From positions 80,217-144,216 of the forward strand of contig NIVC01002737.1 in NCBI GenBank assembly GCA_002269645.1: DNA of 64,000 nucleotides, in the 5' to 3' direction. The number at the start of each line of letters is the position of its first letter. The stretch's first letter is position 1. The stretch is from Macrostomum lignano. Taxonomy: Eukaryota. This document shows positions 5,663-22,630 of the stretch, in pieces. A program made the translations under genes and the position numbers. Under the pieces are notes generated by a model that was not told where the DNA came from, made no database searches, and saw nothing but the letters and a program-made list of their open reading frames with translations.

Positions 5663-8600
5663 ATGGCCTGCGACCTGCTAATGCCATCATCGCAAGGCGG
5701 AGCCAACAATCCAGCCTTCTCGCCGCTGACCCTGTTCGAGTGCACCATCACCAACGCACAGATGCTCATCGACTCCATGGCCGACCGGGACCTGATGCAG
5801 GCCCTGAAGATCGCCGGCGGCCTCCACACCCACATTGTCGGCGTCATCGAGCCGCGCTACGATCGCGTCTGTCAGCGTAGCGACGAGCACGAAGCCTGCT
5901 GCCAGGCGGCTGCCGCGGCTGCAACATCAGCAACGCTGACTCCTTCCAAGTCAGCTGGCGCCGCCAACTCGGCCAGTTTCGGAGCCAATGGCAGCGGCGC
6001 CGATTTGAAATCTGCCGTAGCTGCCGCCGCCGCCGCGGCCGGCCTGAAGTCCGAGTCTACCGGCTCTGTGGCAGCTGGCGGCGTCAAGTCCGAGCTGCTG
6101 GACCCCGACGCGTTCCCCGAGGAAGACGAAGAGGACTGTCTGATCCTGGAGGAGGACTGCTCCTTCCCCGCCGCTGCTGCCGCAATGTCGCCGTCGGCCT
6201 CCAGCTCCGCCAGCCGAAAGCGCCACCGCCCGTTGTCGCCCTCGTCAAGTCTGCAGATGCCGGGCGGAGCCAGCGCGGGTTTTCCTGGCAGCGCCCAGCA
6301 ACTGGCCGAGTGCAAAAATGCGCTCAGGATGGCCTATAAAAATATTAAAGGCAACGGGCCGCACCTGTTTGACTTTGCGCTGTCGTGAGTTGCTCTGCAA
6401 TTCTTGCATCCCTTGTAGAGGGATTCGGTGGGGTATGCGCGGTTGAGGGATTCAGTGGGGTATGAGCGTGTGAGGGATTCAGTGGGGTATGAGCGTGTGA
6501 GGGATTCAGTGGGGTATGAGCGGGTGAGGGATTCAGTGGGGTATGAGCGTGTGAGGGATTCAGTGGGGTATGAGCGTGTGAGGGATTCAGTGGGGTATGA
6601 GCGTGTGAGGGATTCAGTGGGGTATGAGCGTGTGAGGGATTCAGTGGGGTATGAGCGGGTGAGGGATTCAGTGGGGTTGGGTATGAGCGGGTGAGGGATT
6701 CAGTGGCGTATAAGCGTGTGAGGGATTCAGTGGGGTATGAGCGTGTGAGGGATTCAGTGGGGTATGAGCGGGTGAGGGATTCAGTGGGGTATGAGCGTGT
6801 GAGGGATTCAGTGGGGTATGAGCGTGTGAGGGATTCAGTGGGGTATGAGCGTGTGAGGGATTCAGTGGGGTATGAGCGTGTGAGGGATTCAGTGGGGTAT
6901 GAGCGTGTGAGGGATTCAGTGGGGTATGAGCGGGTGAGGGATTCAGTGGGGTATGAGCGTGTGAGGGATTCAGTGGGGTATGAGCGTGTGAGGGATTCAG
7001 TGGGGTATGAGCGGGTGAGGGATTCAGTGGGGTATGAGCGTGTGAGGGATTCAGTGGGGTATGAGCGGGTGAGGGATTCAGTGGGGTATGAGCGTGTGAG
7101 GGATTCAGTGGGGTATGAGCGTGTGAGGGATTCAGTGGGGTATGAGCGGGTGAGGGATTCAGTGGGGTATGAGCGTGTGAGGGATTCAGTGGGGTATGAG
7201 CGGGTGAGGGATTCAGTGGGGTTGGGTATGAGCGGGTGAGGGATTCAGTGGCGTATAAGCGTGTGAGGGATTCAGTGGGGTATGAGCGTGTGAGGGATTC
7301 AGTGGGGTATGAGCGTGTGAGGGATTCAGTGGGGTATGAGCGGGTGAGGGATTCAGTGGGGTTGGGTATGAGCGGGTGAGGGATTCAGTGGCGTATAAGC
7401 GTGTGAGGGATTCAGTGGGGTATGAGCGTGTGAGGGATTCAGTGGGGTATGAGCGTGTGAGGGATTCAGTGGGGTATGAGCGTGTGAGGGATTCAGTGGG
7501 GTATGAGCGTGTGAGGGATTCAGTGGGGTATGAGCGTGTGAGGGATTCAGTGGGGTATGAGCGGGTGAGGGATTCAGTGGGGTATGAGCGGGTGAGGGAT
7601 TCAGTGGGGTATGAGCGGGTGAGGGATTCAGTGGGGTATGAGCGTGTGAGGGATTCAGTGGGGTATGAGCGTGTGAGGGATTCAGTGGGGTATGAGCGGG
7701 TGAGGGATTCAGTGGGGTTGGGTATGAGCGGGTGAGGGATTCAGTGGCGTATAAGCGTGTGAGGGATTCAGTGGGGTATGAGCGTGTGAGGGATTCAGTG
7801 GGGTATGAGCGTGTGAGGGATTCAGTGGGGTATGAGCGTGTGAGGGATTCAGTGGGGTATGAGCGGGTGAGGGATTCAGTTGGGTTGGGTATGAGCGGGT
7901 GAAGGATTCAGTGGCGTATAAGCGGGTGAGGGATTCAGTGGGGTTGGGTATGAGCGGGTGAAGGATTCAGTGGCGTATAAGCGGGTGAGGGATTCAGTGG
8001 GGTATGAGCGTGTGAGGGATTCAGTGGGGTATGAGCGTGTGAGGGATTCAGTGGGGTATGAGCGTGTGAGGGATTCAGTGGGGTATGAGCGGGTGAGGGA
8101 TTCAGTGGGGTTGGGTATGAGCGGGTGAGGGATTCAGTGGCGTATAAGCGTGTGAGGGATTCAGTGGGGTATGAGCGTGTGAGGGATTCAGTGGGGTATG
8201 AGCGTGTGAGGGATTCAGTGGGGTATGAGCGTGTGAGGGATTCAGTGGGGTATGAGCGGGTGAGGGATTCAGTGGGGTTGGGTATGAGCGGGTGAAGGAT
8301 TCAGTGGCGTATAAGCGGGTGAGGGATTCAGTGGGGTTGGGTATGAGCGGGTGAAGGATTCAGTGGCGTATAAGCGGGTGAGGGATTCAGTGGGGTATGA
8401 GCGGGTGAGGGATTCGGTGGGGTATGAGCGGCACAGTGAGGGATCCATTGGGGTCTGAGCAGCACAATGAGGGATTCAGTGGGATATGAGCAGCACAGTG
8501 AAGGATTCAGTGGGGTATGAGCAGCACAATGAGGGATTCAGTGGGGTATGAGCAACACAGTGAGGGATTCAGGGGTCTGAGCAGCACAGTGAGGGATTCA

Positions 8601-11600
8601 GTGGGGTATGAGCAACACAGTGAGGGATTCAGGGGTCTGAGCAGCACAGTGAGGGATTCAGTGGGGTATGAGCAACACAGTGAGGGATTCAGGGGTATGA
8701 GCAGCACAGTGAGGGATTCAGTGGGGTATGAGCAGCACAGTGAGGAATTCAGTGGGGTATGAGCAGCACAGTGAGGGATTCAGTGGGGTATGAGCAGCAC
8801 AGTGAGGGATTCAGTGGGGTATGAGCAGCACAGTGAGGGATTCAGTGGGGTATGAGCAGCACAGTGAGGGATTCAGTGGGGTATGAGCAGCACAGTGAGG
8901 GATTCAGTGGAGTATGAGCAGCACAGTGAGGGATTCAGTGGGGTATGAGCAGCACAGTGAGGGATTCAGTGGGGTATGAGCAGCACAGTGAGGGATTCAG
9001 TGGAGTATGAGCAGCACAGTGAGGGATTCAGTGGGGTGGTGAGGCAGTGCAAGAACCCAACCAATCGCATTACATTTCATTACAATTTCACCAACCAATC
9101 GCAACGCCGCCGCAGCTTCCACGACCCGTCCAATCAGAGAGTGTCCGAGCAGATTATCGCTGCGGCCCGCCAGCAGCTGAGCCACCTGCGCCTGCCTAAC
9201 GATGTCTGGTGGAGTGAGTTGGTTATTTAATAATTTAAACAAATGCATAAGTGACTACTCGCAACCAGTTAAAGTAATAGCATTAGCAAATGTATTAAGT
9301 GAATATTGATGTCGGCCCTCTCCTTGCATTTGGTGACTTCGCACCGTGATCCAGTTTGATTGCCAGCTACAATAAGAGTTTTCATATCTTACCTGAGTAT
9401 GGCTAGTAGCTCGTTCGTTTCCCATGGGACGGCAGCGCAACTGTCCCGTCATTAATTGATTCCGCCTCTATGAATTCATAATTAACTAATTATCTATGCT
9501 CTTCTTAACTGTTAGCAGTACAGTATGCATTTCAGTTTGTTGATTTTGCTTCCCACTATCTGAGGTGCAGGTTTTATTGGTTATTTAAACCGACTGCAGG
9601 GTCGCGTGCTGATTATTGATACAAGCTGTGCAATTAGTTGTACTTTTATTGCTGATCAGCTGCGTGCTGCCGTTCAACTGAAACTTTGTTTAGGCCAAGC
9701 CGGCAACCTGTGTAAGCGAATCAAAATCGAGCTGAACAATAACAAGCGGCGCAATCGGCAGTTTCGCTGCAGGCAGAAGGTTGTTCTCCAACTGATTATT
9801 CTATTGGCTACCTAGCTAGCGAATCCCTACCAGCTGCAATGCTGAGCAGCCAGCCTCCCACATCCCCTAATGAGCCAGCCTCCCACATCCTTAATGAGCC
9901 AGTCTACCTCACCCCTAATGAGCAGCCATCCTCCCACATCCCTAATGAACCAGTCTCCCACATCCCCTAATGAGCCAGTCTCCCTCACCCCCTAATAAGC
10001 AGCCAGCCTACCATATCCCCTAATGAGCCAGCCTCCCACATCCCTTAATGAGCAGCCAGCCTCCAACACCCCATAATGAGCAGCCAGCCTCCCACACTCC
10101 CTAATGATCCAGCCTCTCACATCCCTTAATGAGCAGCCAGCCTCCCACACTCCCTAATGATCCAGCCTCCCACACCCCCTAATGAGCAGCCAGCCTCCCA
10201 CACCCCTAATGATCCAGCCTCCCACACCCCCTAATGAGCAGCCAGCCTCCCACACCCCCTAATGATCCAGCCTCCCACATCCCTTAATGAGCAGCCAGCC
10301 TCCCACACTCCCTAATGAGCCAGCCTCCCACACCCCCTAATGAGCAGCCAGCCTCCCACACCCCCTAATGATCCAGCCTCCCACACCCCCTAATGAGCAG
10401 CCAGCCTCCCACACCCCCTAATGATCCAGCCTCCCACACCCCCTAATGAGCAGCCAGCCTCCCACACCCCCTAATGATCCAGCCTCCCACATCCCTTAAT
10501 GAGCAGCCAGCCTCCCACACTCCCTAATGAGCCAGCCTCCCACACCCCCTAATGAGCAGCCAGCCTCCCACACCCCCTAATGATCCAGCCTCCCACACCC
10601 CCTAATGAGCAGCCAGCCTCCCACACCCCCTAATGAGCAGCCAGCCTCCCACACCCCCTAATGAGCAGCCAGCCTCCCACACCCCCTAATGAGCAGCCAG
10701 CCTCCCACACCCCCTAATGAGCAGCCAGCCTCCCACACCCCTAATGAGCAGCCAGCCTCCCACACCCCTAATGAGCAGTCAGCCTCCCACACCCCCTAAT
10801 GAGCAGCTAGCCTCCCACACTCCATAATGAGCCAGCCTCCCACACCCCCTAATGAGCAGCCAGCCTCCCACATCCCCTAATGAGCAGCCATTGAGTCTTG
10901 TCTTCTTAGCTTAGTTTATTGTGGCAGTGATAACAATCGGGGAAAGTTCTCAATGCCCTTATGAAGTGAAGCGGATCAAACTGCGGTGAAGCGGTGAAGT
11001 CTCGGGCAGTTGCTTGCTCAGCTCCGACAGTCATACCGCAGAGCCAATCAAATGCGTTTTTTAGAATCGCTCAACAGCAGCGGCGTGTTCGGTCAAGCGA
11101 GGCACAATTACTTAGCCAAATTTCGAATGCTTAAAATTAAACGGAAAAGCAACGTAGGTTTATTTGAGACTGTGTGCTCACTGAGCTGCGTGTGTCTGCG
11201 AACTCTGCTAGGTCATGGTTATAACTAGGGGGACAGGCAAATAAACTGACTTGCTGTGCCAGCGCTGTTAACCTGTAACCAAGTGTTAACCCGTAAACAT
11301 AGAAAGGCATGCCACTCGCCTTGCAGACAATAAAGCTGCTCGAGCATTTTATGCCGAGGAGAAAAATCGCGTGCTCACTCGAGTCCGAATGCGCCGCGTT
11401 GCCGGGCAGAAGTCTGTAAGGAGTCGCATCTGCCTTCCCTTCCCATCTTGTTTTTCTGAGTTGCAGTTTTGTCGCTTCTAATAGTTGCTTGATCAGCTGT
11501 TGCCACGGGCGTCTGGAGTTCCCGCTGGACTGGACTGGGGCGAGCATGGGGGGGGGGGGTTAGTCAAATTGGGTATATATTCAAAAGGTATTCATGACGA

Positions 11601-14600
11601 CACTCAAAGATCCCAGTGTCCAGTCCAGATAAGCTCCAGTGGTCCCTGGCCCATTCGCCCATTGTTCATCATGTTAATCGTTGTTATACGCTTTTATAAA
11701 AATTCGTAGCGATTCGGTGGCAAAGAGTTGGCCCATATCGACTAGAGTGCAGCTAGGCAGTATCTATGCAATAATAGCACACTGGATTGGACCGCTTACT
11801 GACCTTATTGCAGAGCACTGCTTCCCCAGCTTGTACGATGAGTTAACCAAATATGACAAGCATAGGGAGCGAATGAAGCACAGAATGCGAGCTCGCAGGC
11901 TTATGAACAGCGTACGTATTATAAATAACTATAACTATTTGGCAGTGCAAGCCTGCTTGTTTCATAAATCACTGCCTAATCGCGCATCAAACGCAAGGTC
12001 CGCGGCTAACACTTCCCATGGTTTCTTAGCGCAATCTTAATCCTCTTTGGGGTTGGGGATTTCTTTTTAAACTGTTTCAGGCCTGTCCAGTGCTGCGTTT
12101 GCTGATCTGCAGCACAGCATATTGGAGAAGCGGCACTATACTAAGCATTCTGTGCGGAAATTCCGCAGCAAACTCAAGGTAAACACTGCCCTGGTCCGGA
12201 TTGGGTCTTTGATATTAGCTTTTGCTTCTGCAGTCCTGTGTGTTCACCGTGTGTTCCGTGTTTGTTCTGGGCTATTAAAAGAGCAAGCTTTAATAGCCAA
12301 GATCTGGTCTGACAGTCGAATCCCACTGTCAAGTCCCAATCCCATAGTCAGAAGTCCCAATCCCGCAGTCAGAAGTCCCAATCCCATAGTCAGAAGTCCC
12401 AATCCCGCAGTCAGAAGTCCCAATCCCATAGTCAGAAGTCCCAATCCCGCAGTCAGAAGTCCCAATCCCATAGTCAGAAGTCCTAATCCCGCAGTCAGAA
12501 GTCCCAATCCCATAGTCAGAAGTCCCAATCCCGCAGTCAGAAGTCCCAATCCCATAGTCAGAAGTCCCAATCCCGCAGTCAGAAGTCCCAATCCCGCAGT
12601 CAGAAGTCCCAATCCCGCAGTCAGAAGTCCCAATCCCATAGTCAGAAGTCCCAATCCCGCAGTCAGAAGTCCCAATCCCATAGTCAGAAGTCCCAAATCC
12701 AATGTCAAGTCCCAATCCCATAGTCAGAAGTCCGAATCCCGCAGTCAGAAGTCCCAATCCCACAGTCAAAAGTCCCAATCTCACAGTGGGAAGTCACAAT
12801 CTCACAGTCAGAAGTCACAATCTCACAGTCGTAAGTCACAATCCCACTGTCAGAAGTCCCAATCTCACAATCAGAAGTCCCAATCCCACAGTCAAATCCC
12901 AAGCCCATAGTCAGAAGTCACAATCCCATAGTCAGAAGTCACAATCCCATAGTCAGAAGTCACAATCCCACAGTCAGAAGTCACAATCACACAGTCGGAA
13001 ATCAATCCCGCAGTCAGAAGTCCCAATCTCACAGTCAGAAGTCACAATCCCATAGTCAGAAGTCACAATCCCATAGTCAGAAGTCACAATCCCACAGTCA
13101 GAAGTCACAATCACGCAGTCGGAAATCACAATCCCGCAGTCAGAAGTCCCAATCACACAGTCGGAAATCACAATCCCGCAGTCAGAAGTCCCAATCACAC
13201 AGTCGGAAATCACAATCCCGCAGTCAGAAGTCCCAATCACACAGTCGGAAATCACAATCCCGCAGTCAGAAGTCCCAATCACACAGTCGGAAATCACAAT
13301 CCCGCAGTCAGAAGTCCCAATCGCACAGTCGGAAATCACAATCCCGCAGTCAGAAGTCCCAATCACACAGTCGGAAATCACAATCCCGCAGTCAGAAGTC
13401 CCAATCACACAGTCGGAAATCACAATCCCGCAGTCAGAAGTCCCAATCGCACAGTCGGAAATCACAATCCCGCAGTCAAAAGTCCTAGCCCTACTAATTT
13501 CAAGTTAATCTCTACTGACTAATCCCTATTAAATTTATTCTGATAAATTAATAGGTTGCATGCCTGTTGGAGGTGCATAGCAACCCGGTACGATGGTAAC
13601 AAATTTCACGCAGCATCAAAAGCAAGGCCCGGCCGCCCCAGTTTAGCCAGCTCCGTTAGAGATTGAATCCAGTGTTTCAGGACCGCCCGGCAGTAACACC
13701 TGCGCCGTGCGCTGCATTGCAGGCTGCGCTGAGGAATTGTGGCTGCTATTGAAGAAAGCTGTGGCGCACAAGCGCGAAAGAGACGTCTTCTATCAGCGCA
13801 AGGGGCGCCTGAAAAATAAAGTAAAACCATGCAATCTATGCTCATTTGCTTACTTTTTCCACCGGGTTTTATCCTTTGTTGTAAATTAACCAATTGGGTC
13901 GGTAAGACGCATATAGGCTTTTAGGAAGTAGGTGCTAATCAGGGACTTTTCTGCTCTCATTTATACGACTGACATGATGCCTCATCTTTAACATTGATTG
14001 GGCTGCGTGATATTACACCTCGCTGCCTCCCGCTCTCCGTCTCCCCTTTCCAACCTCCATCTCCCCCTCCCAGCCTCCCTCTCTACCCCCTCCCAGCCTC
14101 TCTACCCCCTCCCAACCTCTCTCTCTACCCCCTCCCAGCCTCTCTCTCTACCCCCTCCCAGCCTCCCTCTCTACCCCCTCCCAGCCTCCCTCTATCTCCC
14201 GCTCCCAACCTCCATCTCTACCCCCCTCCGAACCTCCCTCTCCATCTCCCTCTCCCGACCTACCTCTCCATCTCCCTCTCCGTGTCCCACACGCCACATA
14301 CAGCTCCTGTTTTCTGACCCATCAGAAACTGGCCAGACGGCAGAAGAGCTTCGAACTGCTAGCAACCAGTTTATCCACCGACAAGTTCGACAAGTACCGC
14401 ATCATTTTGTCCCGGGACTACACTTCGTCTGACGAGGAAGCCGATGTTGGCAGCGGCGGTGCCAGCGCGAGCGGCGATGACGGAGGAGGCGGCGGAGGCG
14501 TCCTTCGAGTCCGCGAGCTGCCCTGGGAATCTGCGGAGCTGCGCGAGATGAAGCAGCAGCTGGACTCTATCTATCTGGAGAATTGCGCAACTCAGAAGCA

Positions 14601-14703
14601 GGCGCAGCAGTTGCGCAGCACAGTGCGCGACTCCGGCTGCGTCAGCGGCAGGACTCCACCTGCCAACTGCCCGTCCTGGGCGCTGTCTAATGAGTACCGC
14701 TAA
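5663..14703 (+). CDS. Gene A: uncharacterized basic, probably nuclear protein with a mutually exclusive exon cluster (427-431 aa)
   Basis: Exon 5663-6384 (phase 2, GTGAGT), exon 9116-9213 (cag|CTTC, ends A|GTGAGT, phase 1), one variant exon from 9694-13820, last exon 14326-14703 (cag|AAACTG, KLARRQKSFELL..YTSSDEE..LRVRELPWES..LD..PSWAL). Phases join; every constitutive exon aligns with gene B. C-terminal motif recalls C14orf93-like proteins (from memory, not searched). Confidence 0.85.
6421..9035. repeat. Intronic minisatellite, 27-bp unit changing to a 31-bp unit
   Basis: GAGGGATTCAGTGGGGTATGAGCGTGT to about 8420, then GAGGGATTCAGTGGGGTATGAGCAGCACAGT; fills intron 1 of gene A. Confidence 0.97.
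9312..9367 (+). promoter_or_regulatory. Putative docking site for the gene A exon cluster
   Basis: CCTTGCATTTGGTG (9322-9335) and GACTTCGCACCGTGATCCAGTTTGATTGCC (9335-9364) are reverse-complementary to segments upstream of five variant exons. Confidence 0.7.
9694..9779 (+). CDS. Gene A variant exon A1 (86 nt, weak donor)
   Basis: ttag|GC..AAG|gttgtt; (S)QAGNLCKRIKIELNNNKRRNRQFRCRQK; partly aligns with A6 (A..L....K....KR....F..R); no convincing selector. Confidence 0.5.
9845..10890. repeat. Minisatellite of about 25-29 bp inside the gene A exon cluster
   Basis: CCTAATGAGCAGCCAGCCTCCCACACCC variants. Confidence 0.95.
11065..11153 (+). CDS. Gene A variant exon A2 (89 nt)
   Basis: ttttttag|AA..AAC|gtaggt; (K)SLNSSGVFGQARHNYLAKFRMLKIKRKSN; selector at 10975-11001. 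Confidence 0.75.
11327..11415 (+). CDS. Gene A variant exon A3 (89 nt)
   Basis: ttgcag|AC..TCT|gtaagg; (N)NKAARAFYAEEKNRVLTRVRMRRVAGQKS; selector GGCAAATAAACTG at 11236-11248. Confidence 0.75.
11814..11911 (+). CDS. Gene A variant exon A4 (98 nt)
   Basis: ttgcag|AG..AGC|gtacgt; (K)HCFPSLYDELTKYDKHRERMKHRMRARRLMNS; weaker selector at 11768-11787. Confidence 0.75.
12081..12178 (+). CDS. Gene A variant exon A5 (98 nt)
   Basis: tttcag|GC..AAG|gtaaac; (S)LSSAAFADLQHSILEKRHYTKHSVRKFRSKLK; selector CATCAAACGCAAGG at 11985-11998. Confidence 0.8.
12330..13480. repeat. 21-bp minisatellite inside the gene A exon cluster
   Basis: CAGAAGTCCCAATCCCATAGT and variants. Confidence 0.96.
13723..13820 (+). 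CDS. Gene A variant exon A6 (98 nt)
   Basis: ttgcag|GC..AAA|gtaaaa; (S)CAEELWLLLKKAVAHKRERDVFYQRKGRLKNK; selector CATCAAAAGCAAGG at 13614-13627. Confidence 0.8.
14030..14280. repeat. CT-rich degenerate repeat before the last exon of gene A
   Basis: CTCTCTACCCCCTCCCAGCCTC units. Confidence 0.85.
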
Positions 14704-15265: not shown

Positions 15266-15854
15266 GAGTTCGTCATACTGTCAATGTTGACTTTTCGAAT
15301 CAAAATTTGAATAGCTCTCCAATGCTGGCACAGAGGCTCCATGCGATTTCAATACCTGGGGAAAAGTATTTGCTGCATTTAAGCTTCAATATTTGCACTG
15401 CGAGTAGTTGCGCAATGTGTCTCTTATCTATAATATTTTACTTGTTGCTGCTATCCCAGTCAGTAAATATTATTGCAATTAGCGAACTTTCATAAACCCC
15501 ACATTGTCACATGTCTCTGTTCACTTGTTAATCTGTAATAAGTTTGCCTGTATTCTGTTTTCATGTGTTTATTATTTTTTGCTGTTGTTTAACTGCCCCC
15601 AGTCATTTCCGCAGCTTTGCTTTTGCGTTAACACACTGTCTCGTTCTGTACATGCTATAAAATACGATAATTACATAACAATATGATAATAATAAATTTA
15701 TTTGCTAAAGAATTTTTCATTCTTTTTCTGTTGTTGCCGATTCATTATCGGAAAAATGCAGTTGTATTACTGTTCTGAAGCTTTGCTCATGTAGTGAAAT
15801 AGACCAGGCTTTATTATTATAGCATAGTGTAGTGCATAGTGCATGTTTAGTTCC

Positions 15855-16280
15855 TGGGATTCCCCTCCAGCACCCATCCCCCTGACTGCCTACCCCACAG
15901 CGTACATTGAATGTCTGGGATTCCCCTCCAGCACCCACCCCTCACTGCTTACCCCACTGCGTACATTGAGGGCCTGAGATTCCCCTCCAGCACCCACCCC
16001 TCACTGCCTACCCCACTGCGTACATTGAGTGTCTGAGATCCCCCTCAAGCACCCACCCCTCACTGCCTACCCCACTGCGTACATTGAATGTCTGGAATTC
16101 CTCTCCAGCACCCACCCCTCACTGCCTACCCCACTGCGTACATTGAATGTCTGGAATTCCTCTCCAGCACCCACCCCTCACTGCCTACCCCACTGCGTAC
16201 ATTGAATGTCTGGAATTCCTCTCCAGCACCCACCCCTCACTGCCTAACCCACTGCGTACATTAAATGTCTGGGATTCCCT
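15855..16280. repeat. 59-bp minisatellite upstream of gene B
   Basis: About 7 copies of CATTGAATGTCTGGAATTCCTCTCCAGCACCCACCCCTCACTGCCTACCCCACTGCGTA. Confidence 0.95.
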
Positions 16281-16341
16281 TCTAGCGCAATGAGTCAAGT
16301 CTGCAATTACGCTTTTGCATGTAGCCTTTCACCACCAAACA

Positions 16342-19300
16342 ATGACGGACATTCTGCCTAGCCACTCCATCACCGGGGGCGTTTTTTCACCCCTGACCCT
16401 GTTCGAGTCCACCATCACCAACGCGCAGATGCTGGTGGAGTCCATGGCCGAGCGGGAGCTGTTCTCCGCCCTGCGCATCATCGGCGGCCTGCACAGCCAC
16501 GTTGTCCAGGTCATGGAGCCGCGCTACGGCCGCCTGTGTGAGCGCAGCGACCACCTCGCCGAGCTGGAGGCCGCCGGCCTGGATCAAAGCCACGGCTCCG
16601 CTGCCGAGGCTGCCGAAGCCACTTCATCCTCGTCGGCTGCTGCCGCTTCTAGCAGACGCTTCGCTAAGGAGGAGAAACTGCTAGGCGACACCGACACGGA
16701 GCAGCAGTGCACCTCAGTGCTGCGCTCCGCCCTTGGCACCATCAAGGTATTTCCTATTCACCGCGTTGTGATGTCGGCGCCTTTCCTATTATATTTGATG
16801 TCGCGGACTTTCCCATCTCCTCTGATGTCGCCGCCTTTCCCATCTCCTCTGATGTCGCCGCCTTTCCCATCTCCTCTGATGTCGCCGACTTTCCCATCTC
16901 CTCTGATGTCGCCGCCTTTCCCATCTCCTCTGATGTCGCCGACTTTCCCATCTCCTCTGATGTCGCCGACTTTCCCCACTCCTTTGATGTCGCCGCCTTT
17001 CCCCACTCCTTTGATGTCGCCGCCTTTCCCGTCTCTTTGATGTCGCCGTCATTCTCTTCTCTTCTGGTGCTCAACAGATGGAGAACTTTGACGCGGCCGG
17101 CGCTTCCGCCCTGCCATCCGCCGCTAACGCAAACTTCGGCGAACAGCTGGAGCCGCCGGAGATCTTGGAAGAGGACGCCGATGATGAAGACGAGGATGAC
17201 GATTGCGTCATCACCGACTACTTCGACGACAGCAGCTTTGGCGCTAGCGGCATCGGCGCCTTCGGTGGCGTCGGCCCGTCGCCCGCCAAAATGCCGCGAC
17301 TCGGCGGGGTCGGCGGCGGCGCAGGCGACAGCTCGATGCCGGCCGAGTGCAAGACCATCATGCGCCGGGCTTACAAAGCTCTCAAGGGCAACGGGCCGCA
17401 TCTGTTTGACTTCAGCCTGCCGTGAGTCTCCTTAGCTGGCACGCCGGTTACCAGTCCCGGCCTCAGTCTGGAAACGCCTCTAGAAATCTTCGACCTTACA
17501 TCAGCCAAAATGCAAACCCTGGTTAGGCTACCCTGAACAAACCCTGAGCCACCCCTGAACAAACCCTGAGCCACCCCTGAACTCAAGTCTGAGCCATTCC
17601 CTGAACTCAACCCTGAGCCACCCCTTGAACTCAACCCTGAGCCACCCCCTGAACTTAACCCTGAGCCACCCCCTGAGCTCAATCCTGAGCCACCCCCTGA
17701 ACTCAACTCTGAGCCACCCCCTGAACTCAACTCTGAGCCACCCCCTGAACTCAACTCTGAGCCACCCCCTGATCTCAACCCTGAGCCAGCCCCTGAACTC
17801 AACCCTGAGCCACCCCTTGAACTCAACCCTGAGCCAGCCCTGATCTCTGTGGACTCAAGAGCGCCGCCTCCCCCACCGCCGGCCCCACAGCTTCTCTTCG
17901 GAGCACAACCAGCGAGTTGCCACCCGCGTCACCGCCAAAGCCAAGGAGATGGCCCAGGGCAAGGGCTGGCCGAGGACATTTGGCTGAGTGAGAATCAGTG
18001 CCGCTTTTTGTGCATTTAGATATAAAGTTTGATAAGTTGATAAATGATGTGTAGAATACAACTCTTAATTAAGATTACACTGCGTATGAAGTAGTTAATA
18101 GAATAGATTAATCGTAAAATCTTATCTTAGTTATATTCTATTAATACTACTCGCACAGACTAGCCAAGTAGTATCTATAGGCTGCGCTAATGTGCTAATT
18201 TTACCTGCCCTCAAGTCTGGAAACGTCGCAAGTAATTTGGGTACAAGAAATATTTAATAACTAATTTTAATCTCCTTTCAACTTGGGCTGCTTCTAATAG
18301 GTTCATGTCTGACTATTTGAGACACAATCAGAGACTTAATTATGCATTAATTATCTAATTAATTATTTGCATTATTTCTATTGCCGAACTGCCTACAGTT
18401 AGCAGGTGGTAAAGCGATGTAATGCTACTGAGACTGTTGCCTATTCGACGTTTCTTATTGGCCATTTAGAATGAGTTTTGAATAAAGCTGAACTGCTCAA
18501 CTCACACTTAGAACTGCCCTACGGCTCAAGGCTAGTCTACCTGTACCTGGATTTTCGGCAAAAGATGAGGTTTAAGCATCGATGCGTTGTAAGCTTTGCT
18601 GGTCATCTCTGTTTCTATCGGTTTTTTGTGTCACACCAGCCTCCACTGTCCTGCTTGCGATGTTCGCCCAGACTCGCGTCTTTATAACAGGCTTTGCTCA
18701 AAACAGTTTTGCCAATATGTTTCTGGCCTCCAATTTGCCCAGGGCTGCCCAAAGAGTCCAGAGTAAATCGGATTCACTGCACCTATGGAGCCCGTCTGCG
18801 CGCCAAGCACAGGCAGATTGTGAGTTCCCTCCCCCTGTGCCCTCCCCTGTACCTTGATGAGCCGCCTCTCCCCCTGTGCCTTTGATGAGCCGCCTCTCCC
18901 CTTGTGCCTTTGATAAGCCGCCTCCCTCCCCCTGTGCCTTTGATAAGCCGCCTCCCTCCCCCTGAGCCTTTGATGAGCCGCCTCTCCCCCATGTGCCTTT
19001 GATCAGCCGCCTCTGCCCCTGTGCCTTTGATGAGCGGCCTCCCTTCCCCTGAGCCTTTGATAAGCCGCCTCTCCCCTGAGCCTTTGATGAGCCGCCTCTC
19101 CCCTTGTGCCTTTGATAAGCCGCCTCCCTCCCCTGAGCCTTTGATAAGCCGCCTCTCCCCTTGTGCCTTTGATAAGCCGCCTCCCTCCCCTGAGCCTTTG
19201 ATGAGCCGCCTCTCCCCCATGTGCCTTTGATCAGCCGCCTCTGCCCCTGTGCCTTTGATGAGCGGCCTCCCTTCCCCTGAGCCTTTGATAAGCCGCCTCT

Positions 19301-22239
19301 CCCCTGAGCCTTTGATGAGCCGCCTCTCCCCTTGTGCCTTTGATAAGCCGCCTCCCTCCCCCTGTGCCTTTGATAAGCCGCCCCCCTCCCCTGAGCCTTT
19401 GATGAGCCGCCTCTCCCCATGTGCCTTTGATCAGCCGCCTCTGCCCCTGTGCCTTTGATGAGCGGCCTCCCTTCCCCTGAGCCTTTGATAAGCCGCCTCT
19501 CCCCTGAGCCTTTGATGAGCCGCCTCTCCCCTTGTGCCTTTGATAAGCCGCCTCTCCCCCCTGTGCCTTTGATAAGCCGCCTCCCTCCCCCTGAGCCTTT
19601 GATGAGCCGCCTCTCCCCCATGTGCCTTTGATCAGCCGCCTCTGCCCCTGTGCCTTTGATGAGCGGCCTCCCTTCCCCTGAGCCTTTGATAAGCCGCCTC
19701 TCCCCTGAGCCTTTGATGAGCCGCCTCTCCCCTTGTGCCTTTGATAAGCCGCCTCCCTCCCCTGAGCCTTTGATAAGCCGCCTCTCCCCTTGTGCCTTTG
19801 ATAAGCCGCCTCCCTCCCCCTGAGCCTTTGATAAGCCGCCTCTCCCCTTGTGCCTTTGATGAGCCGCCTCTCCCCTTGTGCCTTTGATAAGCCGCCTCCC
19901 TCCCCTGAGCCTTTGATAAGCCGCCTCTCCCCTTGTGCCTTTGATCAGCCGCCTCTCCCCCTGTGCCTTTGATAAGCCGCCTCCCTCCCCCCTGAGCCTT
20001 TGATGTCCGCCTGTCTTTGCGCTGGGTTAAGCAAGTCAGTGATAAATAAGTCTACAATTTTACAATCAATTCGACGTTTCCCGTCTGGACAGTTGGCTAA
20101 AAACTCTCGCCTATAAGTGCACCCAGAGTCTGAGGCGATTTTCCCGCAGGACTGCCGAAAGTCGGCCGCCTGTCCGAGATTTTCTTTGTTTTCAGAAGTC
20201 AAATCCGAAACAAGCTGCGACTCGTTGTACGCAATTGTCACAGTTCCGCACTTTCTCTGTTGTGTTGGGAATTTTTCTGTCAAAAATTTTCTACGATGCA
20301 TATCGGCGTTTCCTGACTAAAGTTGAGCAGATTTGGCTTTGCGTAGCAAATTTCTACCAAAGTCGCTATCGTCTACTCACGCCAGTCAGTAGTGTATTGA
20401 GGAGTGCTCGGCTCACTTTTTACATCTATTTTTAGATCTGCCTTCCAGCGGCAAAATCAGGAAGATATTCACCGATTTTAGGCAGAAGATGCGCGCTAGG
20501 CTGGTGCTTGGCGTGCGTGCCCGATTTTCTCTGTTTAGGTTTTTATTTAATTTTTTGACGTTTCCCGGCTGCCTGTAAGCTCACTGCTGTGTGAGGCTTG
20601 TGCTTGCTAACACTTGACCTGACTGCCCCGCTGTTGCAGGGCTGCCACACACCGGCCGGCCGACCGCCATATTCAACGATTTTAGAAAGAAAATGCGCAC
20701 CAGGTTTCGGATGGATGTTAGTGATAATTGCTTTAGGTGTTTCTATGGGGCTCTGCGAATTCCGCTTCAGTGCTGAGACGTTTCCTGACAATGGCCGGGT
20801 GCTGCAATTGTGCGAACCCCCCCGTGTCCGTCACGCCACCGACTGCCGCTTGCAGATCTGCCGCCCAAGGCCCGCCTGCTCGCCATTTTTGGCGACTTTA
20901 AAAAGAAAAGGCGATTCAAGTCCCGCTCTGATGTCAGTGCAGCTGGGTGGCTTTTCGCCTCATCTGTGTTGTTTGTTTTTCCCCATTTTTGATTGCTCTG
21001 CCTTGGCGGGGTAGGCAGGGTAGCTAGATTGGTAGACAGACAAATTGATTGATTGACAGACAGGCCGGCAGGCAAACAAACACTAAGATAGGCAAACAGA
21101 CAGACACAGATACGCTAGCAGACCAACGTAATTGCGCGGTGCACCGTGGGGGGGTGTGAGGCTGTACATTGCTGGCACTGTGGGGCCCCGGGCCAGCAAC
21201 CTTTACCCGCTGTAACTTATCGCTCAGCCTGTTACAATGCCAGACGTTTCCTGACAACTCAGACTGTGAATTGTACAGCACACAGAATTGCCAGCAAACA
21301 GTTACCCATCGCGCGCGTTGCAGAGCTGCCCATGAACAGCCGATTGATCTGCATATTCGCCGACTTTAGAAAGAAGATGCGCAACAGATTTCGTTCAGAT
21401 GTTGGTCCGGGTTCAAAACTCGATTTCAGAGCTTTCAGGCTGCGATATGAAAATATTTGTTACATGCTATTGGAACTACTGTACTGACTGCTGATCAGTA
21501 GTCAATGCCATCATGATATGAAAAATGATTCCTCTCTGATTTGCTTCTGTTTAAACTGTACTGAGCTGTCGAAAAGCCACTGCATGACCTGAGCTATGAC
21601 TGAAAAGCCACTGCATGACCTGATCTATGACTGAAAAGCCACTGCATGACCTGATCTATGACTGAAAAGCCACTGCATGACCTGAGCTATGACTGAACAG
21701 CCGCTGTATGAGATCTGAGCTATGACTGAAAAGCCACCACTCTATGACCTGAGCTATGACTGAAAAGCCACTGTATGAAGGCTATGACTGAAATGAATCT
21801 CAAAGCAGCCAGCTCTCGCAGTCTTGCCTCGCTTCCCCCGAACTTGCAGAAGCTGAACCGCCGTCAGAAAAGTTTCGAACTCGTGGCCACCAGCCTGACC
21901 TCCGACGAGCTGGAGAAGTTCCGCGTGATCCTCACCAGGGAGTACACCAGCTCGGATGAGGAGTGCGGCTCCGGCGGCGCCGACCAGCTGCGGGTCCGCG
22001 AGCTGTCCTGGGAGTCCGACGAGGTGAAGCGGCTGAAGCGGCAGCTGGACCAGGTTTACGCGGACAACTGCGCCACCACCAAGCAGAAGCAGCAGCTGGC
22101 CAGGTGCATCCGCGACCCCGTCCGATCGCGGTCGCAGCGGCCGCCGCCCGAGGCTGCGCCAAGCTGGGCTTTGAAGGCGCCGCTGCAGAAGAACCGGCCG
22201 GGAGACGGCGCTCCGCCGCCCGCCTCCGGCACAGCCTGA
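16342..22239 (+). CDS. Gene B: paralog of gene A with seven 77-nt mutually exclusive exons (437 aa if one missing base in exon 3 is restored)
   Basis: Exons 16342-16746, 17078-17421, 17891-17987, one 77-nt variant exon, 21850-22239. Shares FSPLTLFE.TITNAQML..SMA.R.L..AL.I.GGLH, ECK..R.AYK..KGNGPHLFDF.L, F....NQRV and KL.RRQKSFEL.ATSL..YTSSDEE..LRVREL.WES with gene A. Exon 3 is 97 nt vs 98 nt in gene A. Confidence 0.8.
16790..17045. repeat. 27-bp minisatellite in gene B intron 1
   Basis: TGATGTCGCCGCCTTTCCCATCTCCTC. Confidence 0.95.
17530..17840. repeat. 24-bp minisatellite in gene B intron 2
   Basis: CTGAACTCAACCCTGAGCCACCCC. Confidence 0.95.
18212..18232 (+). promoter_or_regulatory. Putative docking site for the gene B exon cluster
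   Basis: CAAGTCTGGAAACGTCGCAAG, between the constitutive donor (17988) and the first variant exon; reverse complement of the GACGTTTCC(TGAC) motif seen before all seven variant exons. Confidence 0.85.
18512..18588 (+). CDS. Gene B variant exon B1 (77 nt)
   Basis: cttag|AA..GTT|gtaagc; (K)LPYGSRLVYLYLDFRQKMRFKHRCV; selector CGACGTTTC at 18446-18454. Confidence 0.85.
18743..18819 (+). CDS. Gene B variant exon B2 (77 nt)
   Basis: cccag|GG..ATT|gtgagt; (R)LPKESRVNRIHCTYGARLRAKHRQI; selector CTTGCGATGTTCGCCCAGACT from 18654. Confidence 0.85.
18825..20000. repeat. Minisatellite of about 28-30 bp inside the gene B exon cluster
   Basis: GCCTTTGATAAGCCGCCTCTCCCC(TT)GT/GA variants. Confidence 0.96.
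20150..20226 (+). CDS. Gene B variant exon B3 (77 nt)
   Basis: cgcag|GA..GTT|gtacgc; (R)LPKVGRLSEIFFVFRSQIRNKLRLV; selector CGACGTTTCC at 20072-20081. Confidence 0.85.
20436..20512 (+). CDS. Gene B variant exon B4 (77 nt)
   Basis: ttttag|AT..GGC|gtgcgt; (N)LPSSGKIRKIFTDFRQKMRARLVLG; selector CGGCGTTTCCTGACT at 20304-20318. Confidence 0.85.
20640..20716 (+). CDS. Gene B variant exon B5 (77 nt)
   Basis: ttgcag|GG..GAT|gttagt; (R)LPHTGRPTAIFNDFRKKMRTRFRMD; selector GACGTTTCCCGGCT at 20557-20570. Confidence 0.85.
20856..20932 (+). CDS. Gene B variant exon B6 (77 nt)
   Basis: ttgcag|AT..GAT|gtcagt; (N)LPPKARLLAIFGDFKKKRRFKSRSD; selector GACGTTTCCTGAC at 20777-20789. Confidence 0.85.
21324..21400 (+). 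CDS. Gene B variant exon B7 (77 nt)
   Basis: ttgcag|AG..GAT|gttggt; (K)LPMNSRLICIFADFRKKMRNRFRSD; selector GACGTTTCCTGAC at 21243-21255. Confidence 0.85.
21575..21795. repeat. Short tandem repeat (about 31 bp) before the last exon of gene B
   Basis: ATGACCTGAGCTATGACTGAAAAGCCACTGC variants. Confidence 0.9.
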
Positions 22240-22264: not shown

Positions 22265-22630
22265 GACCTGACTTCATCTGCCCTTCTCCGTTATCCGCTC
22301 CCATACGCCCTTACCCTCCGTTATTCGCCCCTTCATCCGCCCTTACCCTCCTTTATTCAACCCCATTCGCCCTTATTTTCCGTTATCCGCCACCTCATCC
22401 GCCCTTACCCTCCGTTATCCGCCCCCTCATCCGCCCCCTCATCCGCCCTTACCCTCTGTTATTCGCCCCTTCATCCGCCCTTACCCTCCTTTATTCGCCC
22501 TTACCCTCCGTTATTCGCCCTTACCCTCCGTTATCCGCCCTTACTCTCCGTTATTTGCCCCTCCAGCCGCCCTTTCTCTTTATCCGCCCCCTTTCTTGCC
22601 CTTGCTCTCACAGTCTCTGTTATCCGCCCC
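22265..22630. repeat. Degenerate C/T-rich repeat 3' of gene B
   Basis: CCGCCCTTACCCTCCGTTAT units. Confidence 0.85.

What the first reader, a model, noticed from the sequence alone, without database searches (positions are those of the whole stretch)
18212..21400. Dscam-style mutually exclusive exon array: seven 77-nt exons, one docking site, seven selectors (gene B)
Seen directly: seven homologous exons (18512, 18743, 20150, 20436, 20640, 20856, 21324), each exactly 77 nt, each AG/GT-bounded, phase 1 in and phase 0 out, stop-free, and alignable without gaps as xLP...R...IF.dFr.kmR.r.r. They lie between a constitutive exon ending in phase 1 and a last exon starting in phase 0, so exactly one must be used; two would frameshift. 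Each is preceded by a motif (GACGTTTCC(TGAC) or variant) ending about 58-70 nt upstream in six cases and 118 nt in one. The motif is the reverse complement of CAAGTCTGGAAACGTCGCAAG at 18212-18232, upstream of the whole array. B5 pairs at 13 of 14 positions and B6/B7 at 12 of 13; B2 forms two stems of 11 and 7 pairs. Established knowledge: competing docking-site/selector pairing is how the Drosophila Dscam1 exon 6 cluster picks one exon. Inference: this non-Dscam gene uses the same mechanism; I know of no such description for this gene family or an apparent flatworm.
Basis: partly seen in the sequence, partly recalled or inferred. Interest (0 to 1): 0.96.

Follow-up and report, generated by a model that had tools for sequence, protein, structure and literature searches.

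The report
Flatworm exon array with docking-selector RNA pairing
An uncharacterised gene of the flatworm Macrostomum lignano carries seven interchangeable 77-base exons, each preceded by a short intron sequence complementary to one shared upstream site, the layout that lets the fly Dscam1 gene pick a single exon, and two sister genes have the same layout.

Summary
Seven homologous 77-nt exons, all AG/GT-bounded and open in one frame, lie at the stated coordinates. Each is preceded by a complement of one upstream site at 18212-18236.

The window is Macrostomum lignano, gene BOX15_Mlig032950g1, from a family without Pfam domains.

Two paralogous genes fetched from the same assembly carry arrays of 13 and 5 such exons. 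Their 17-nt docking core, CTGGAAACGTCGCAAGT, is identical although introns are unalignable and four-fold sites are only 46-59% identical. Selectors sit 58-94 nt upstream of 16 of 24 exons (about 0.05 expected) and tile different parts of the docking site. A paralog with a single 77-nt exon has neither element.

RNA-seq-based gene models of the paralogs include exactly one variable exon. A second, predicted UniRef model of one paralog uses a different exon. One model skips all variable exons and frameshifts.

- The upstream constitutive exon is only 17891-17987; the PEPPPELN repeat is intronic.
- This copy lacks one C in that exon, which creates a stop codon.
- No transcript model yet joins this gene's own variable exons.

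The splicing mechanism is inferred, not shown. I rate this a new member of a known kind. I found no earlier description of it in flatworms.

The parts
16342..16746 (+). Gene B exon 1, coding part (ATG at 16342)
   Evidence: Translation matches P0004 and P0138 (BOX15_Mlig032950g2/g1); GT donor at 16747.
17078..17421 (+). Gene B exon 2 (ends in phase 2, donor GTGAGT)
   Evidence: The spliced translation ...GTIK|MENFDAAG...FDFSLP| matches P0004/P0138.
17464..17478 (+). Second, docking-like site in intron 2 (CAGTCTGGAAACGCC)
   Evidence: Shares AGTCTGGAAACG with the docking site. It forms the longest inverted repeat of the region with the B4 selector, 17465-17493 against 20290-20318. Its role is unknown.
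17891..17987 (+). Gene B exon 3, the constitutive exon before the array. It is 97 nt here and 98 nt in the other copy; one C is missing in the run at 17970-17971, which gives TGA at 17985-17987.
   Evidence: P0004/P0139 read ...GKGWPEDIWL; P0138 (this copy) reads ...GKGWPRTFG*. Alignment with L003 shows the missing C. Donor GTGAG at 17988.
18212..18236 (+). Docking site; the conserved core CTGGAAACGTCGCAAGT is at 18217-18233
   Evidence: The 17-nt core is identical in the window, L003, L001, L002, L006 and L007, with unalignable flanks. It is complementary to all seven selectors.
18443..18461 (+). Selector B1 (ATTCGACGTTTCTTATTGG)
   Evidence: 9-nt exact complement at 18446-18454, 58 nt before the exon. 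Duplex -17.1 kcal/mol, the weakest of the seven.
18512..18588 (+). Variable exon B1 (77 nt)
   Evidence: Its exon type recurs as L001_14913 and L002_16142.
18653..18675 (+). Selector B2 (GCTTGCGATGTTCGCCCAGACTC)
   Evidence: 13+7 bp with the docking site, -30.5 kcal/mol, rank 1 of 12,775 windows. The block CTTGCGATGTT is shared with the selector of the same exon type in L001.
18743..18819 (+). Variable exon B2 (77 nt)
   Evidence: Its exon type recurs as L001_15159 (used in model P0009) and L002_16410.
20071..20091 (+). Selector B3 (TCGACGTTTCCCGTCTGGACA)
   Evidence: 10-nt exact complement; duplex -19.2 kcal/mol; inverted repeat I3.
20150..20226 (+). Variable exon B3 (77 nt)
20303..20319 (+). 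Selector B4 (TCGGCGTTTCCTGACTA), 116 nt before the exon
   Evidence: Duplex -22.4 kcal/mol, 0 of 100 shuffles as good. Its GGCGTTTCC is the exact complement of the intron-2 docking-like site.
20436..20512 (+). Variable exon B4 (77 nt)
20555..20571 (+). Selector B5 (TTGACGTTTCCCGGCTG)
   Evidence: 14 pairs with one mismatch, -20.4 kcal/mol; inverted repeat I11.
20640..20716 (+). Variable exon B5 (77 nt)
20775..20790 (+). Selector B6 (GAGACGTTTCCTGACA)
   Evidence: 9+3 bp around a U.U mismatch, -23.1 kcal/mol; inverted repeat I4. The only selector difference between the two copies is T>C at 20786, the unpaired position.
20856..20932 (+). Variable exon B6 (77 nt)
21241..21256 (+). Selector B7 (CAGACGTTTCCTGACA)
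   Evidence: 12 of 13 pairs, -23.5 kcal/mol; inverted repeat I12.
21324..21400 (+). Variable exon B7 (77 nt)
21850..22239 (+). Last exon (phase 0, ends TGA), encoding the conserved C-terminal domain KLNRRQKSFEL...TSSDEE...LRVRELSWES...
   Evidence: 89% identical to P0001. 112 homologues at E<=0.001, mostly M. lignano plus one oyster protein.

Best explanation
Gene B (BOX15_Mlig032950g1 of Macrostomum lignano) has a cluster of seven tandemly duplicated 77-nt exons between exon 3 and the last exon.

Because 77 is not a multiple of three, only one exon (or four, or seven) keeps the reading frame. Shown: zero or two exons frameshift.

Inferred mechanism. In the pre-mRNA, the docking site in the first intron of the cluster (18212-18236) pairs with one selector at a time. 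The selectors lie 50-116 nt upstream of each variable exon. All of them overlap the GGAAACG centre of the docking site, so their pairings exclude one another. The helix loops out the exons upstream of the chosen one. It also brings the chosen exon's 3' splice site next to the exon-3 donor, so that this exon is used, as in the exon 6 cluster of Drosophila Dscam1.

Transcripts with none or several variable exons are out of frame and presumably lost to nonsense-mediated decay.

The variable exon encodes the first ~25 residues of a long basic helix just before the conserved C-terminal domain. The array would therefore give seven versions of that helix. The arrays of the sister genes would give 13 and 5 versions.
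For: Shown directly:
- Exon anatomy, frame and homology.
- The exons average only 51% nucleotide identity and the introns are unalignable. The longest strings shared between upstream introns are the selector motif.
- Complementarity of all seven selectors to one site.

Comparative evidence:
- Paralogous genes L001/L006 (13 exons: 12 of 77 nt and one of 71 nt) and L002/L007 (5 exons) have the same design.
- The docking core is 17/17 identical in all of them, while four-fold sites of the flanking coding exons are 46-59% identical. The chance estimate is about 2e-7.
- Exact complements of at least 8 nt to the core lie 58-94 nt upstream of 16 of 24 exons, against 0.05 expected from the background rate.
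- Selectors tile the docking site: ACTTGCGAC at one end and CGTTTCCAG at the other share almost nothing with each other.
- Selectors pair slightly better with their own gene's docking flanks than with the other genes' (17 of 24, Wilcoxon P=0.014).
- The single-exon paralog L004 has ~90-nt introns and no docking site or selector.

Transcript-derived GenBank models (annotation built from RNA-seq, PMC5730564):
- P0008/P0135 use only L002 exon 14543.
- P0145 uses only the exon equivalent to L001 15621.
- UniRef model P0009 (a predicted model, not RNA-seq-based) uses L001 15159.
- P0136 joins exon 3 directly to the last exon and frameshifts.

Other:
- Between near-identical assembly copies, variable exons carry 6 substitutions in 1919 nt against 52 in 4029 nt of adjacent intron (P=2e-4).
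- The AlphaFold2 model places the variable segment at the start of helix 307-344 of P0008.
Against: - No experiment or read-level data show that pairing governs exon choice.
- For gene B itself, all three GenBank models (P0004, P0138, P0139) end in the retained intron after exon 3. Use of B1-B7 is therefore not documented.
- This copy has a 1-nt deletion in exon 3 that puts TGA at the exon end.
- B3-B7 have weak donor sites (GTACG, GTGCG, GTTAG, GTCAG, GTTGG), unlike the paralog exons.
- By free energy alone, B1, B3 and B5 are not clearly better than shuffled docking sites, and GC-rich sequence elsewhere in the window reaches similar energies.
- Four of 13 exons in L001 and one of 5 in L002 have no convincing selector.
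- Between recent copies, selectors are not significantly more conserved than their immediate flanks: 1/504 against 7/1317, and 2/530 against 52/4029 for local intron, P=0.08.
- The docking core never varies, so classical compensatory covariation cannot be scored.
Confidence: 0.75

Rival explanations
1. The repeated motif is only a leftover of the tandem duplications that made the exons. Each duplicated unit carried one arm of an old intronic stem-loop, and it has no present function.
For: Ivanov and Pervouchine (PMC6071210) show that duplication of one arm of a stem-loop creates docking/selector patterns automatically. B6 and B7 share a 16-nt block. Between recent copies, selectors are no better conserved than their flanks.
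Against: The exons themselves have decayed to 39-70% identity and the rest of each intron is unalignable, yet the motif is kept. The docking core is 17/17 identical across three paralogs at a divergence where four-fold sites are 46-59% identical. Selectors that share almost no sequence with one another still complement the docking site. This model explains the origin of the pattern, not why it was retained.
Confidence: 0.05
2. The conserved intronic elements are binding sites for a splicing factor (an intronic enhancer or silencer centred on CGUUUC). They do not act through RNA-RNA pairing, and the inverted copy upstream is incidental.
For: Most selectors share the short core CGTTTC at a fairly fixed distance from the 3' splice site, as expected of a protein site.
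Against: The upstream element is the reverse complement, which is a different sequence in RNA. Complementarity extends from the core in different directions in different selectors, following the docking sequence (TTGCGACGTTT, ACTTGCGAC, CGTTTCCAG, CCAGACT). B2-type selectors have a diverged core but the longest helix. Flank pairing is gene-specific.
Confidence: 0.07
3. The system is real in the family, but this particular copy of gene B is a decaying duplicate. Exon 3 carries a frameshift that creates a stop codon, so the array in this window is no longer translated.
For: One C is missing at 17970-17971, and GenBank protein P0138 from this copy ends ...GWPRTFG*. The assembly contains redundant copies at least 95% identical, derived from extra chromosomes of the DV1 line (PMC5730564). 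B3-B7 have weak donors. No transcript model reaches the variable exons.
Against: The difference is a homopolymer length (CC against CCC) in a long-read assembly (long-read origin is from my own knowledge, not checked), so it may be an assembly error. The two other copies are intact. All seven exons and the last exon are open and nearly identical between copies: 2 differences in 539 nt.
Confidence: 0.25
4. Docking-selector helices form but do something other than select an exon. They might be general intron-bridging structures, or repress the exon next to the paired selector. Under this reading, single inclusion is enforced mainly by the reading frame plus mRNA decay and by splice-site strength.
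For: 77 nt gives a frameshift for 0, 2, 3, 5 or 6 exons. A model that skips all variable exons exists (P0136). Some exons lack selectors yet keep intact splice sites and frames.
Against: Decay alone cannot prevent in-frame inclusion of four exons and would waste most transcripts. The fixed position upstream of each 3' splice site and the single shared partner match the activating layout of Dscam exon 6 (PMC6071210, PMC11802352).
Confidence: 0.12

Closest known systems
Drosophila/arthropod Dscam1 exon 6 cluster (Graveley 2005; May et al. 2011, as summarised in PMC6071210 and PMC11802352)
   Same: The docking site lies in the intron just after the upstream constitutive exon. There is one selector upstream of each variable exon. 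Each selector complements an overlapping part of the docking site, so only one helix can form. The variable exons are tandem duplicates of equal length.
   Different: The gene is unrelated (no Ig or FN3 domains, no Pfam domain). It has 7 (or 13, or 5) exons of 77 nt instead of 48 exons of about 124 nt. The frame rule (77 nt) adds a second safeguard. No repressor such as hrp36, locus control region or balancer structure has been identified. The phylum is Platyhelminthes. Nothing has been tested experimentally.
Insect 14-3-3zeta, Mhc, MRP1, srp and Dscam exon 4/9 clusters (Yang et al. 2011; Yue et al. 2016-2017, as cited in PMC6071210)
   Same: Competing intronic RNA pairings are associated with mutually exclusive homologous exons in genes other than Dscam.
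   Different: Those docking sites lie downstream of the cluster or act bidirectionally (PMC6071210). Here the docking site is upstream.
Vertebrate two-exon cases (ATE1 exons 7a/7b, PMC7797038; dynamin 1, Suyama 2013)
   Same: Competing base pairings choose between duplicated exons outside arthropods.
   Different: Those cases have two exons only and long-range elements of another layout. Here there are arrays of 5-13 exons sharing one docking site.
Duplication model for the origin of docking/selector systems (Ivanov and Pervouchine 2018, PMC6071210)
   Same: An array of duplicated exons, each carrying one arm of a stem. The B2-type selector, which matches 20 of the docking bases, looks like the original partner.
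   Different: Here the elements have outlived the decay of the rest of the introns and the split of three paralogs. The single-exon paralog L004 shows no ancestral stem.
Mutually exclusive exons already reported in helminths (coq-2, mrp-1; PMC7434440, citing Yue et al. 2017)
   Same: [quoted passage not shown]
   Different: Those are two-exon events in conserved enzymes or transporters. I could not read Yue et al. 2017, so I cannot say whether RNA pairing was shown there for any flatworm.

Membership tests
Docking-site/selector (competing RNA structure) mutually exclusive exon cluster, Dscam exon 6 type | Tandem array of homologous alternative exons of equal length and phase between constitutive exons | tested here: met
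   Seven exons of 77 nt, AG/GT-bounded, same frame. Exon 3 ends in phase 1 in the intact copies and the last exon starts in phase 0.
Docking-site/selector (competing RNA structure) mutually exclusive exon cluster, Dscam exon 6 type | A single docking site in the intron between the upstream constitutive exon and the first variable exon, conserved in evolution | tested here: met
   Site at 18212-18236. The 17-nt core is identical in three paralogous genes with unalignable flanks.
Docking-site/selector (competing RNA structure) mutually exclusive exon cluster, Dscam exon 6 type | A selector upstream of each variable exon, complementary to an overlapping part of the docking site, so that the helices exclude one another | tested here: met
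   7 of 7 exons in the window (B1, B3 and B5 weak by energy alone); 9 of 13 in L001; 4 of 5 in L002. All helices include the GGAAACG centre.
Docking-site/selector (competing RNA structure) mutually exclusive exon cluster, Dscam exon 6 type | Exactly one variable exon in each mature mRNA, with different exons in different mRNAs | tested here: inconclusive
   RNA-seq-based models of the paralogs contain one exon (P0008, P0135, P0145). A further UniRef model uses another exon (P0009). One model skips all of them (P0136). No model covers B1-B7 of this gene, and no read counts are available.
Docking-site/selector (competing RNA structure) mutually exclusive exon cluster, Dscam exon 6 type | Compensatory covariation between docking site and selectors | tested here: inconclusive
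   The core is invariant, so it cannot covary. Flank pairing is better with a gene's own docking site in 17 of 24 cases, P=0.014. Orthologues from other species were not available.
Docking-site/selector (competing RNA structure) mutually exclusive exon cluster, Dscam exon 6 type | Disrupting the pairing changes exon choice, and compensatory mutation restores it | not testable with these tools
   This needs minigenes or transgenic animals.
Dscam gene family | Ig and fibronectin III domains, with the variable exons encoding Ig half-domains | tested here: not met
   No Pfam domain in any family member. No PDB sequence or fold match. The model is helical.

The most novel reading that the evidence does not exclude
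A docking-site/selector system of the Dscam exon 6 layout arose independently in a flatworm, in a lineage-expanded gene family of unknown function. It has been maintained in at least three paralogous genes with 5, 7 and 13 alternative exons. That would make Macrostomum lignano, which can be made transgenic, a second and much smaller experimental system for stochastic or regulated choice among many exons. The docking-like copies in intron 2, one of them amplified into a minisatellite in a paralog, might act as decoys or balancers.
Probability: 0.65. Interest if true: 0.85.

Novelty: new member of a known kind. Interest (0 to 1): 0.78.

Why it matters
Multi-exon clusters governed by one upstream docking site are so far textbook material from a single arthropod gene, Dscam1. 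An independent case in another phylum, in three small paralogous arrays, would show that this solution evolves repeatedly. It would also offer natural comparisons of how selectors and docking sites drift together.

The arrays are compact (3-7 kb) and sit in an animal with working transgenesis. That allows tests of how pairing strength, exon order and splice-site strength set exon frequencies.

The finding also flags a set of wrong automatic gene models that chain several variable exons together. And it points to a family of uncharacterised proteins in which one basic helix is deliberately diversified.

Tried and rejected
- Free-energy scanning of the docking site against the whole window and RNAduplex on long introns are poorly specific. 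GC-rich sequence gives similar energies through loopy structures. I relied on exact complements and position instead.
- My first copy-to-copy conservation test counted gap columns as differences and overstated intron divergence. Substitution-only counts against a local background still support constraint on the exons (P=2e-4) but not significantly on the selectors (P=0.08).
- A shared motif TCTCTGTT just downstream of B1, B3 and B4 looked like a second element, but it is absent from the paralogs.
- I first took part of model P0001 for intron read-through. It is a spurious 77-nt open segment at L001 13851.
- Gene A, the upstream neighbour, has no homologous array. A search for pairing between its two alternative exons was uninformative.
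- Pfam, PDB sequence search, Foldseek and Rfam gave nothing.
- Exact look-ups of P0001 and of the window's last-exon ORF found no contig.
- Paralog L005 showed no 77-nt exon.
- Yue et al. 2017 could not be read.
- No paper mentions these gene identifiers.
Full report
**What is in the sequence.**
The seven segments start at 18512, 18743, 20150, 20436, 20640, 20856 and 21324. Each is exactly 77 nt, is preceded by AG and followed by GT, and is open only in frame 2. They encode related peptides of the form LP..R...IF.DFRKKMR.RFR... A tblastn search with the seven peptides, and later an HMM scan of every AG-77nt-GT open segment, find these seven and nothing else in the 64 kb.

The exons average only 51% nucleotide identity (range 39-70%), so the duplications are old. 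The introns between them cannot be aligned. The longest strings shared by the upstream introns are pieces of one motif, GACGTTTCC(TGAC).

That 9-mer occurs exactly four times on the + strand (before B3, B5, B6, B7) and once on the - strand at 18219-18227, and nowhere else in the window. One-mismatch copies precede B1 and B4. The B2 intron has a diverged core, but it matches the reverse complement of 18213-18235 over 13+7 base pairs with a 3-nt bulge (-30.5 kcal/mol). That is the best of 12,775 windows scanned across the whole window. An independent inverted-repeat search recovers the docking pairs with B3, B5, B6 and B7.

**Organism and gene.**
The closest proteins are all from Macrostomum lignano. 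Exons 1-3 translate exactly to the GenBank proteins BOX15_Mlig032950g1/g2.

The gene model is:
- exon 1, coding part 16342-16746
- exon 2, 17078-17421
- exon 3, 17891-17987
- the seven variable exons
- a last exon, 21850-22239

That 24-nt minisatellite (17531-17847) lies in intron 2.

In this copy, exon 3 lacks one C (CC at 17970-17971 against CCC in the copy L003). This puts TGA at 17985-17987, and GenBank protein P0138 indeed ends ...GWPRTFG. The Mlig_3_7 assembly is known to hold redundant copies at least 95% identical (PMC5730564). Whether the missing C is an assembly error or a real lesion in one copy cannot be decided here.

**The protein family.**
The family has no Pfam domain, no PDB sequence match and no fold match. 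It is large in M. lignano. Its C-terminal domain has 112 homologues at E<=0.001, including one oyster protein. An AlphaFold2 model of paralog P0008 is confident over the C-terminal half. It places the variable 26 residues at the start of a long helix, residues 307-344.

**Comparative test.**
I fetched genomic DNA for paralogs from the same assembly:
- L003 is a 97%-identical second copy of this locus.
- L001/L006 is a sister gene with 12 variable exons of exactly 77 nt plus one of 71 nt.
- L002/L007 is another sister gene with five such exons.

Exon types are collinear between the genes. B1 corresponds to L001_14913 and L002_16142. B2 corresponds to L001_15159 and L002_16410. The array therefore predates the gene duplications.

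In each gene, the intron after exon 3 contains the identical 17-mer CTGGAAACGTCGCAAGT, with flanks that share nothing. Four-fold degenerate sites in the neighbouring coding exons are only 46-59% identical. A rough chance estimate for such an island is about 2e-7.

Exact complements of at least 8 nt to this core lie 58-94 nt upstream of 5 of 7, 8 of 12 and 3 of 5 variable exons. Six occur in the remaining ~149 kb examined. That is 16 observed against 0.05 expected in those zones. RNAduplex finds a selector for 9 of 13 exons in L001 and 4 of 5 in L002.

The selectors tile the docking site:
- Those of L002 mostly pair with GAAACGTCGCAAGTT.
- Those of the window mostly pair with GTCTGGAAACGTC.
- Two L001 selectors, ACTTGCGAC and CGTTTCCAG, share almost nothing with each other yet both complement the docking site.

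This tiling argues for RNA-RNA pairing rather than a common protein-binding motif. Selectors also pair somewhat better with their own gene's docking flanks than with the other genes' (17 of 24, P=0.014). This is suggestive co-evolution, not proof.

A more distant paralog, L004, has a single 77-nt exon between ~90-nt introns and has no docking or selector sequence. The elements therefore go with the arrays.

**Evidence on use.**
The GenBank annotation of this assembly comes from a genome-guided RNA-seq assembly (PMC5730564). These models bear on exon use:
- P0008 and P0135 contain exactly one variable exon (L002 14543 / L007 15133) and skip two upstream and two downstream exons.
- P0145 contains only the exon equivalent to L001 15621.
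- The UniRef model P0009 of the same gene uses L001 15159 instead.
- P0136 joins exon 3 directly to the last exon and runs out of frame, as the phase rule predicts.

For gene B itself, all three GenBank models stop in the retained intron after exon 3. Use of B1-B7 is therefore undocumented. Several UniRef ab initio models chain two or more variable exons in shifted frames. These are prediction artefacts.

**Constraint between recent copies.**
My first count treated gaps as differences and overstated intron divergence. I recounted substitutions only, against intron sequence within 140 nt of the exons, and pooled over the three copy pairs:

| Class | Substitutions | Sites | Test against local intron |
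|---|---|---|---|
| Variable exons | 6 | 1919 | P=2e-4 |
| Selectors | 2 | 530 | P=0.08 |
| Local intron | 52 | 4029 | - |

Selectors plus docking sites (1 in 504) are no better conserved than their ±30-nt flanks (7 in 1317). This test supports functional exons but has little power for the RNA elements. The one selector difference between the window and L003, T>C at 20786, falls on the unpaired U.U position of the B6 helix.

**Mechanism.**
Shown:
- the anatomy;
- the frame rule, by which 0 or 2 exons frameshift;
- conservation of the docking site;
- placement and complementarity of the selectors;
- overlap of all helices on the GGAAACG centre, so that only one can form at a time.

Inferred by analogy with Dscam1 exon 6 (PMC6071210, PMC11802352): the docking-selector helix loops out the upstream variable exons and activates the exon just downstream of the paired selector. 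Out-of-frame products are removed.

What silences the exons downstream of the chosen one is unknown. In this gene, B3-B7 have weak donor sites, which may contribute.

**Rivals.**
- A pure duplication relic is unlikely, given that the elements were retained through the decay of everything around them.
- A protein-binding motif is unlikely, given the tiling and the inverted orientation.
- Decay of this particular copy remains possible.
- A role of the helices other than exon selection cannot be excluded.

**Comparison and novelty.**
[quoted passage not shown] PMC6071210 describes this as the exception among known cases; the others have downstream docking sites. The gene is not a Dscam.

Full-text searches found no paper linking Macrostomum or flatworms with docking/selector splicing, and none naming these genes. 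Mutually exclusive exons are known in helminth coq-2 and mrp-1 (PMC7434440). I could not read Yue et al. 2017, so a prior flatworm example of competing pairing in MRP genes cannot be excluded.

I classify the finding as a new member of a known kind. I am about 0.9 confident that the conserved docking/selector architecture is real. I am about 0.75 confident that it directs mutually exclusive splicing.

Noticed in passing
window 17964-17987: Exon 3 of this copy lacks one C (CC at 17970-17971; the L003 copy has CCC). This shifts the frame and creates TGA at 17985-17987. GenBank protein P0138 ends there, while two other assembled copies are intact.
   Followed up: yes
window 17464-17478; L002 11460-11960: A second docking-like sequence (CAGTCTGGAAACGCC) lies in intron 2 of this gene. 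With the B4 selector region it forms the longest inverted repeat of the locus (29 nt, 72% complementary). In paralog L002, intron 2 holds a 25-nt minisatellite whose unit GTTTCCTGGAAACCGCTAGTCTC contains a docking-like CCTGGAAAC. L001 has nothing comparable.
   Followed up: partly
window 20946-20974 and 21553-21580 (repeat 21571-21793): The intron just downstream of B6 (GGTGGCTTTTC...) is complementary to the unit GAAAAGCCAC of the 31-nt minisatellite in the last intron (11 nt perfect; 28 nt at 71%). This could be chance, or a second pairing that brings B6 close to the last exon.
   Followed up: no
window 5663-14703 (gene A, BOX15_Mlig000635g2): The upstream neighbour is a paralog of the same family. 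It has two candidate alternative middle exons of unrelated sequence but the same phase class: 9694-9779 (86 nt) and 13723-13820 (98 nt). Model P0148 uses the second, and model P0010 runs through the first into the intron. The same A-type/B-type gene pair precedes the arrays in L001 and L002.
   Followed up: partly
window 15854-16286, 16796-17066, 17531-17847, 18854-20012, 21571-21793, 22286-22572: Almost every longer intron and flank of this gene holds a minisatellite (periods 59, 27, 24, 57, 31 and 32 nt). The 1.16-kb one sits between B2 and B3.
   Followed up: yes
window 20227, 20513, 20717, 20933, 21401: The donor sites of B3-B7 are GTACG, GTGCG, GTTAG, GTCAG and GTTGG. All 17 paralog variable exons examined have GTAAG, GTGAG or GTAAT.
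   Followed up: partly
window 18606, 20254, 20528: TCTCTGTT lies 16-28 nt downstream of the donors of B1, B3 and B4, with partial copies after B5 and B6. It is not conserved in the paralog arrays, so it is probably a duplication remnant.
   Followed up: yes
L001 12876-12946, 16702, 17902, 18147; L002 13004: The first exon of each paralog array and the last three of L001 lack a convincing selector. The first L001 exon is 71 nt (two codons shorter, same phase). L001 17902 has a degenerate selector, GCAACGCAGACCA.
   Followed up: partly
proteins P0005, P0006, P0015, P0140 (UniRef models of this locus): Automatic gene models chain two to four variable exons, partly in wrong frames, and even translate the B6 selector (TFPDNGRV...). 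They carry misleading names such as Exo70, Sec8 or WASH_WAHD.
   Followed up: yes
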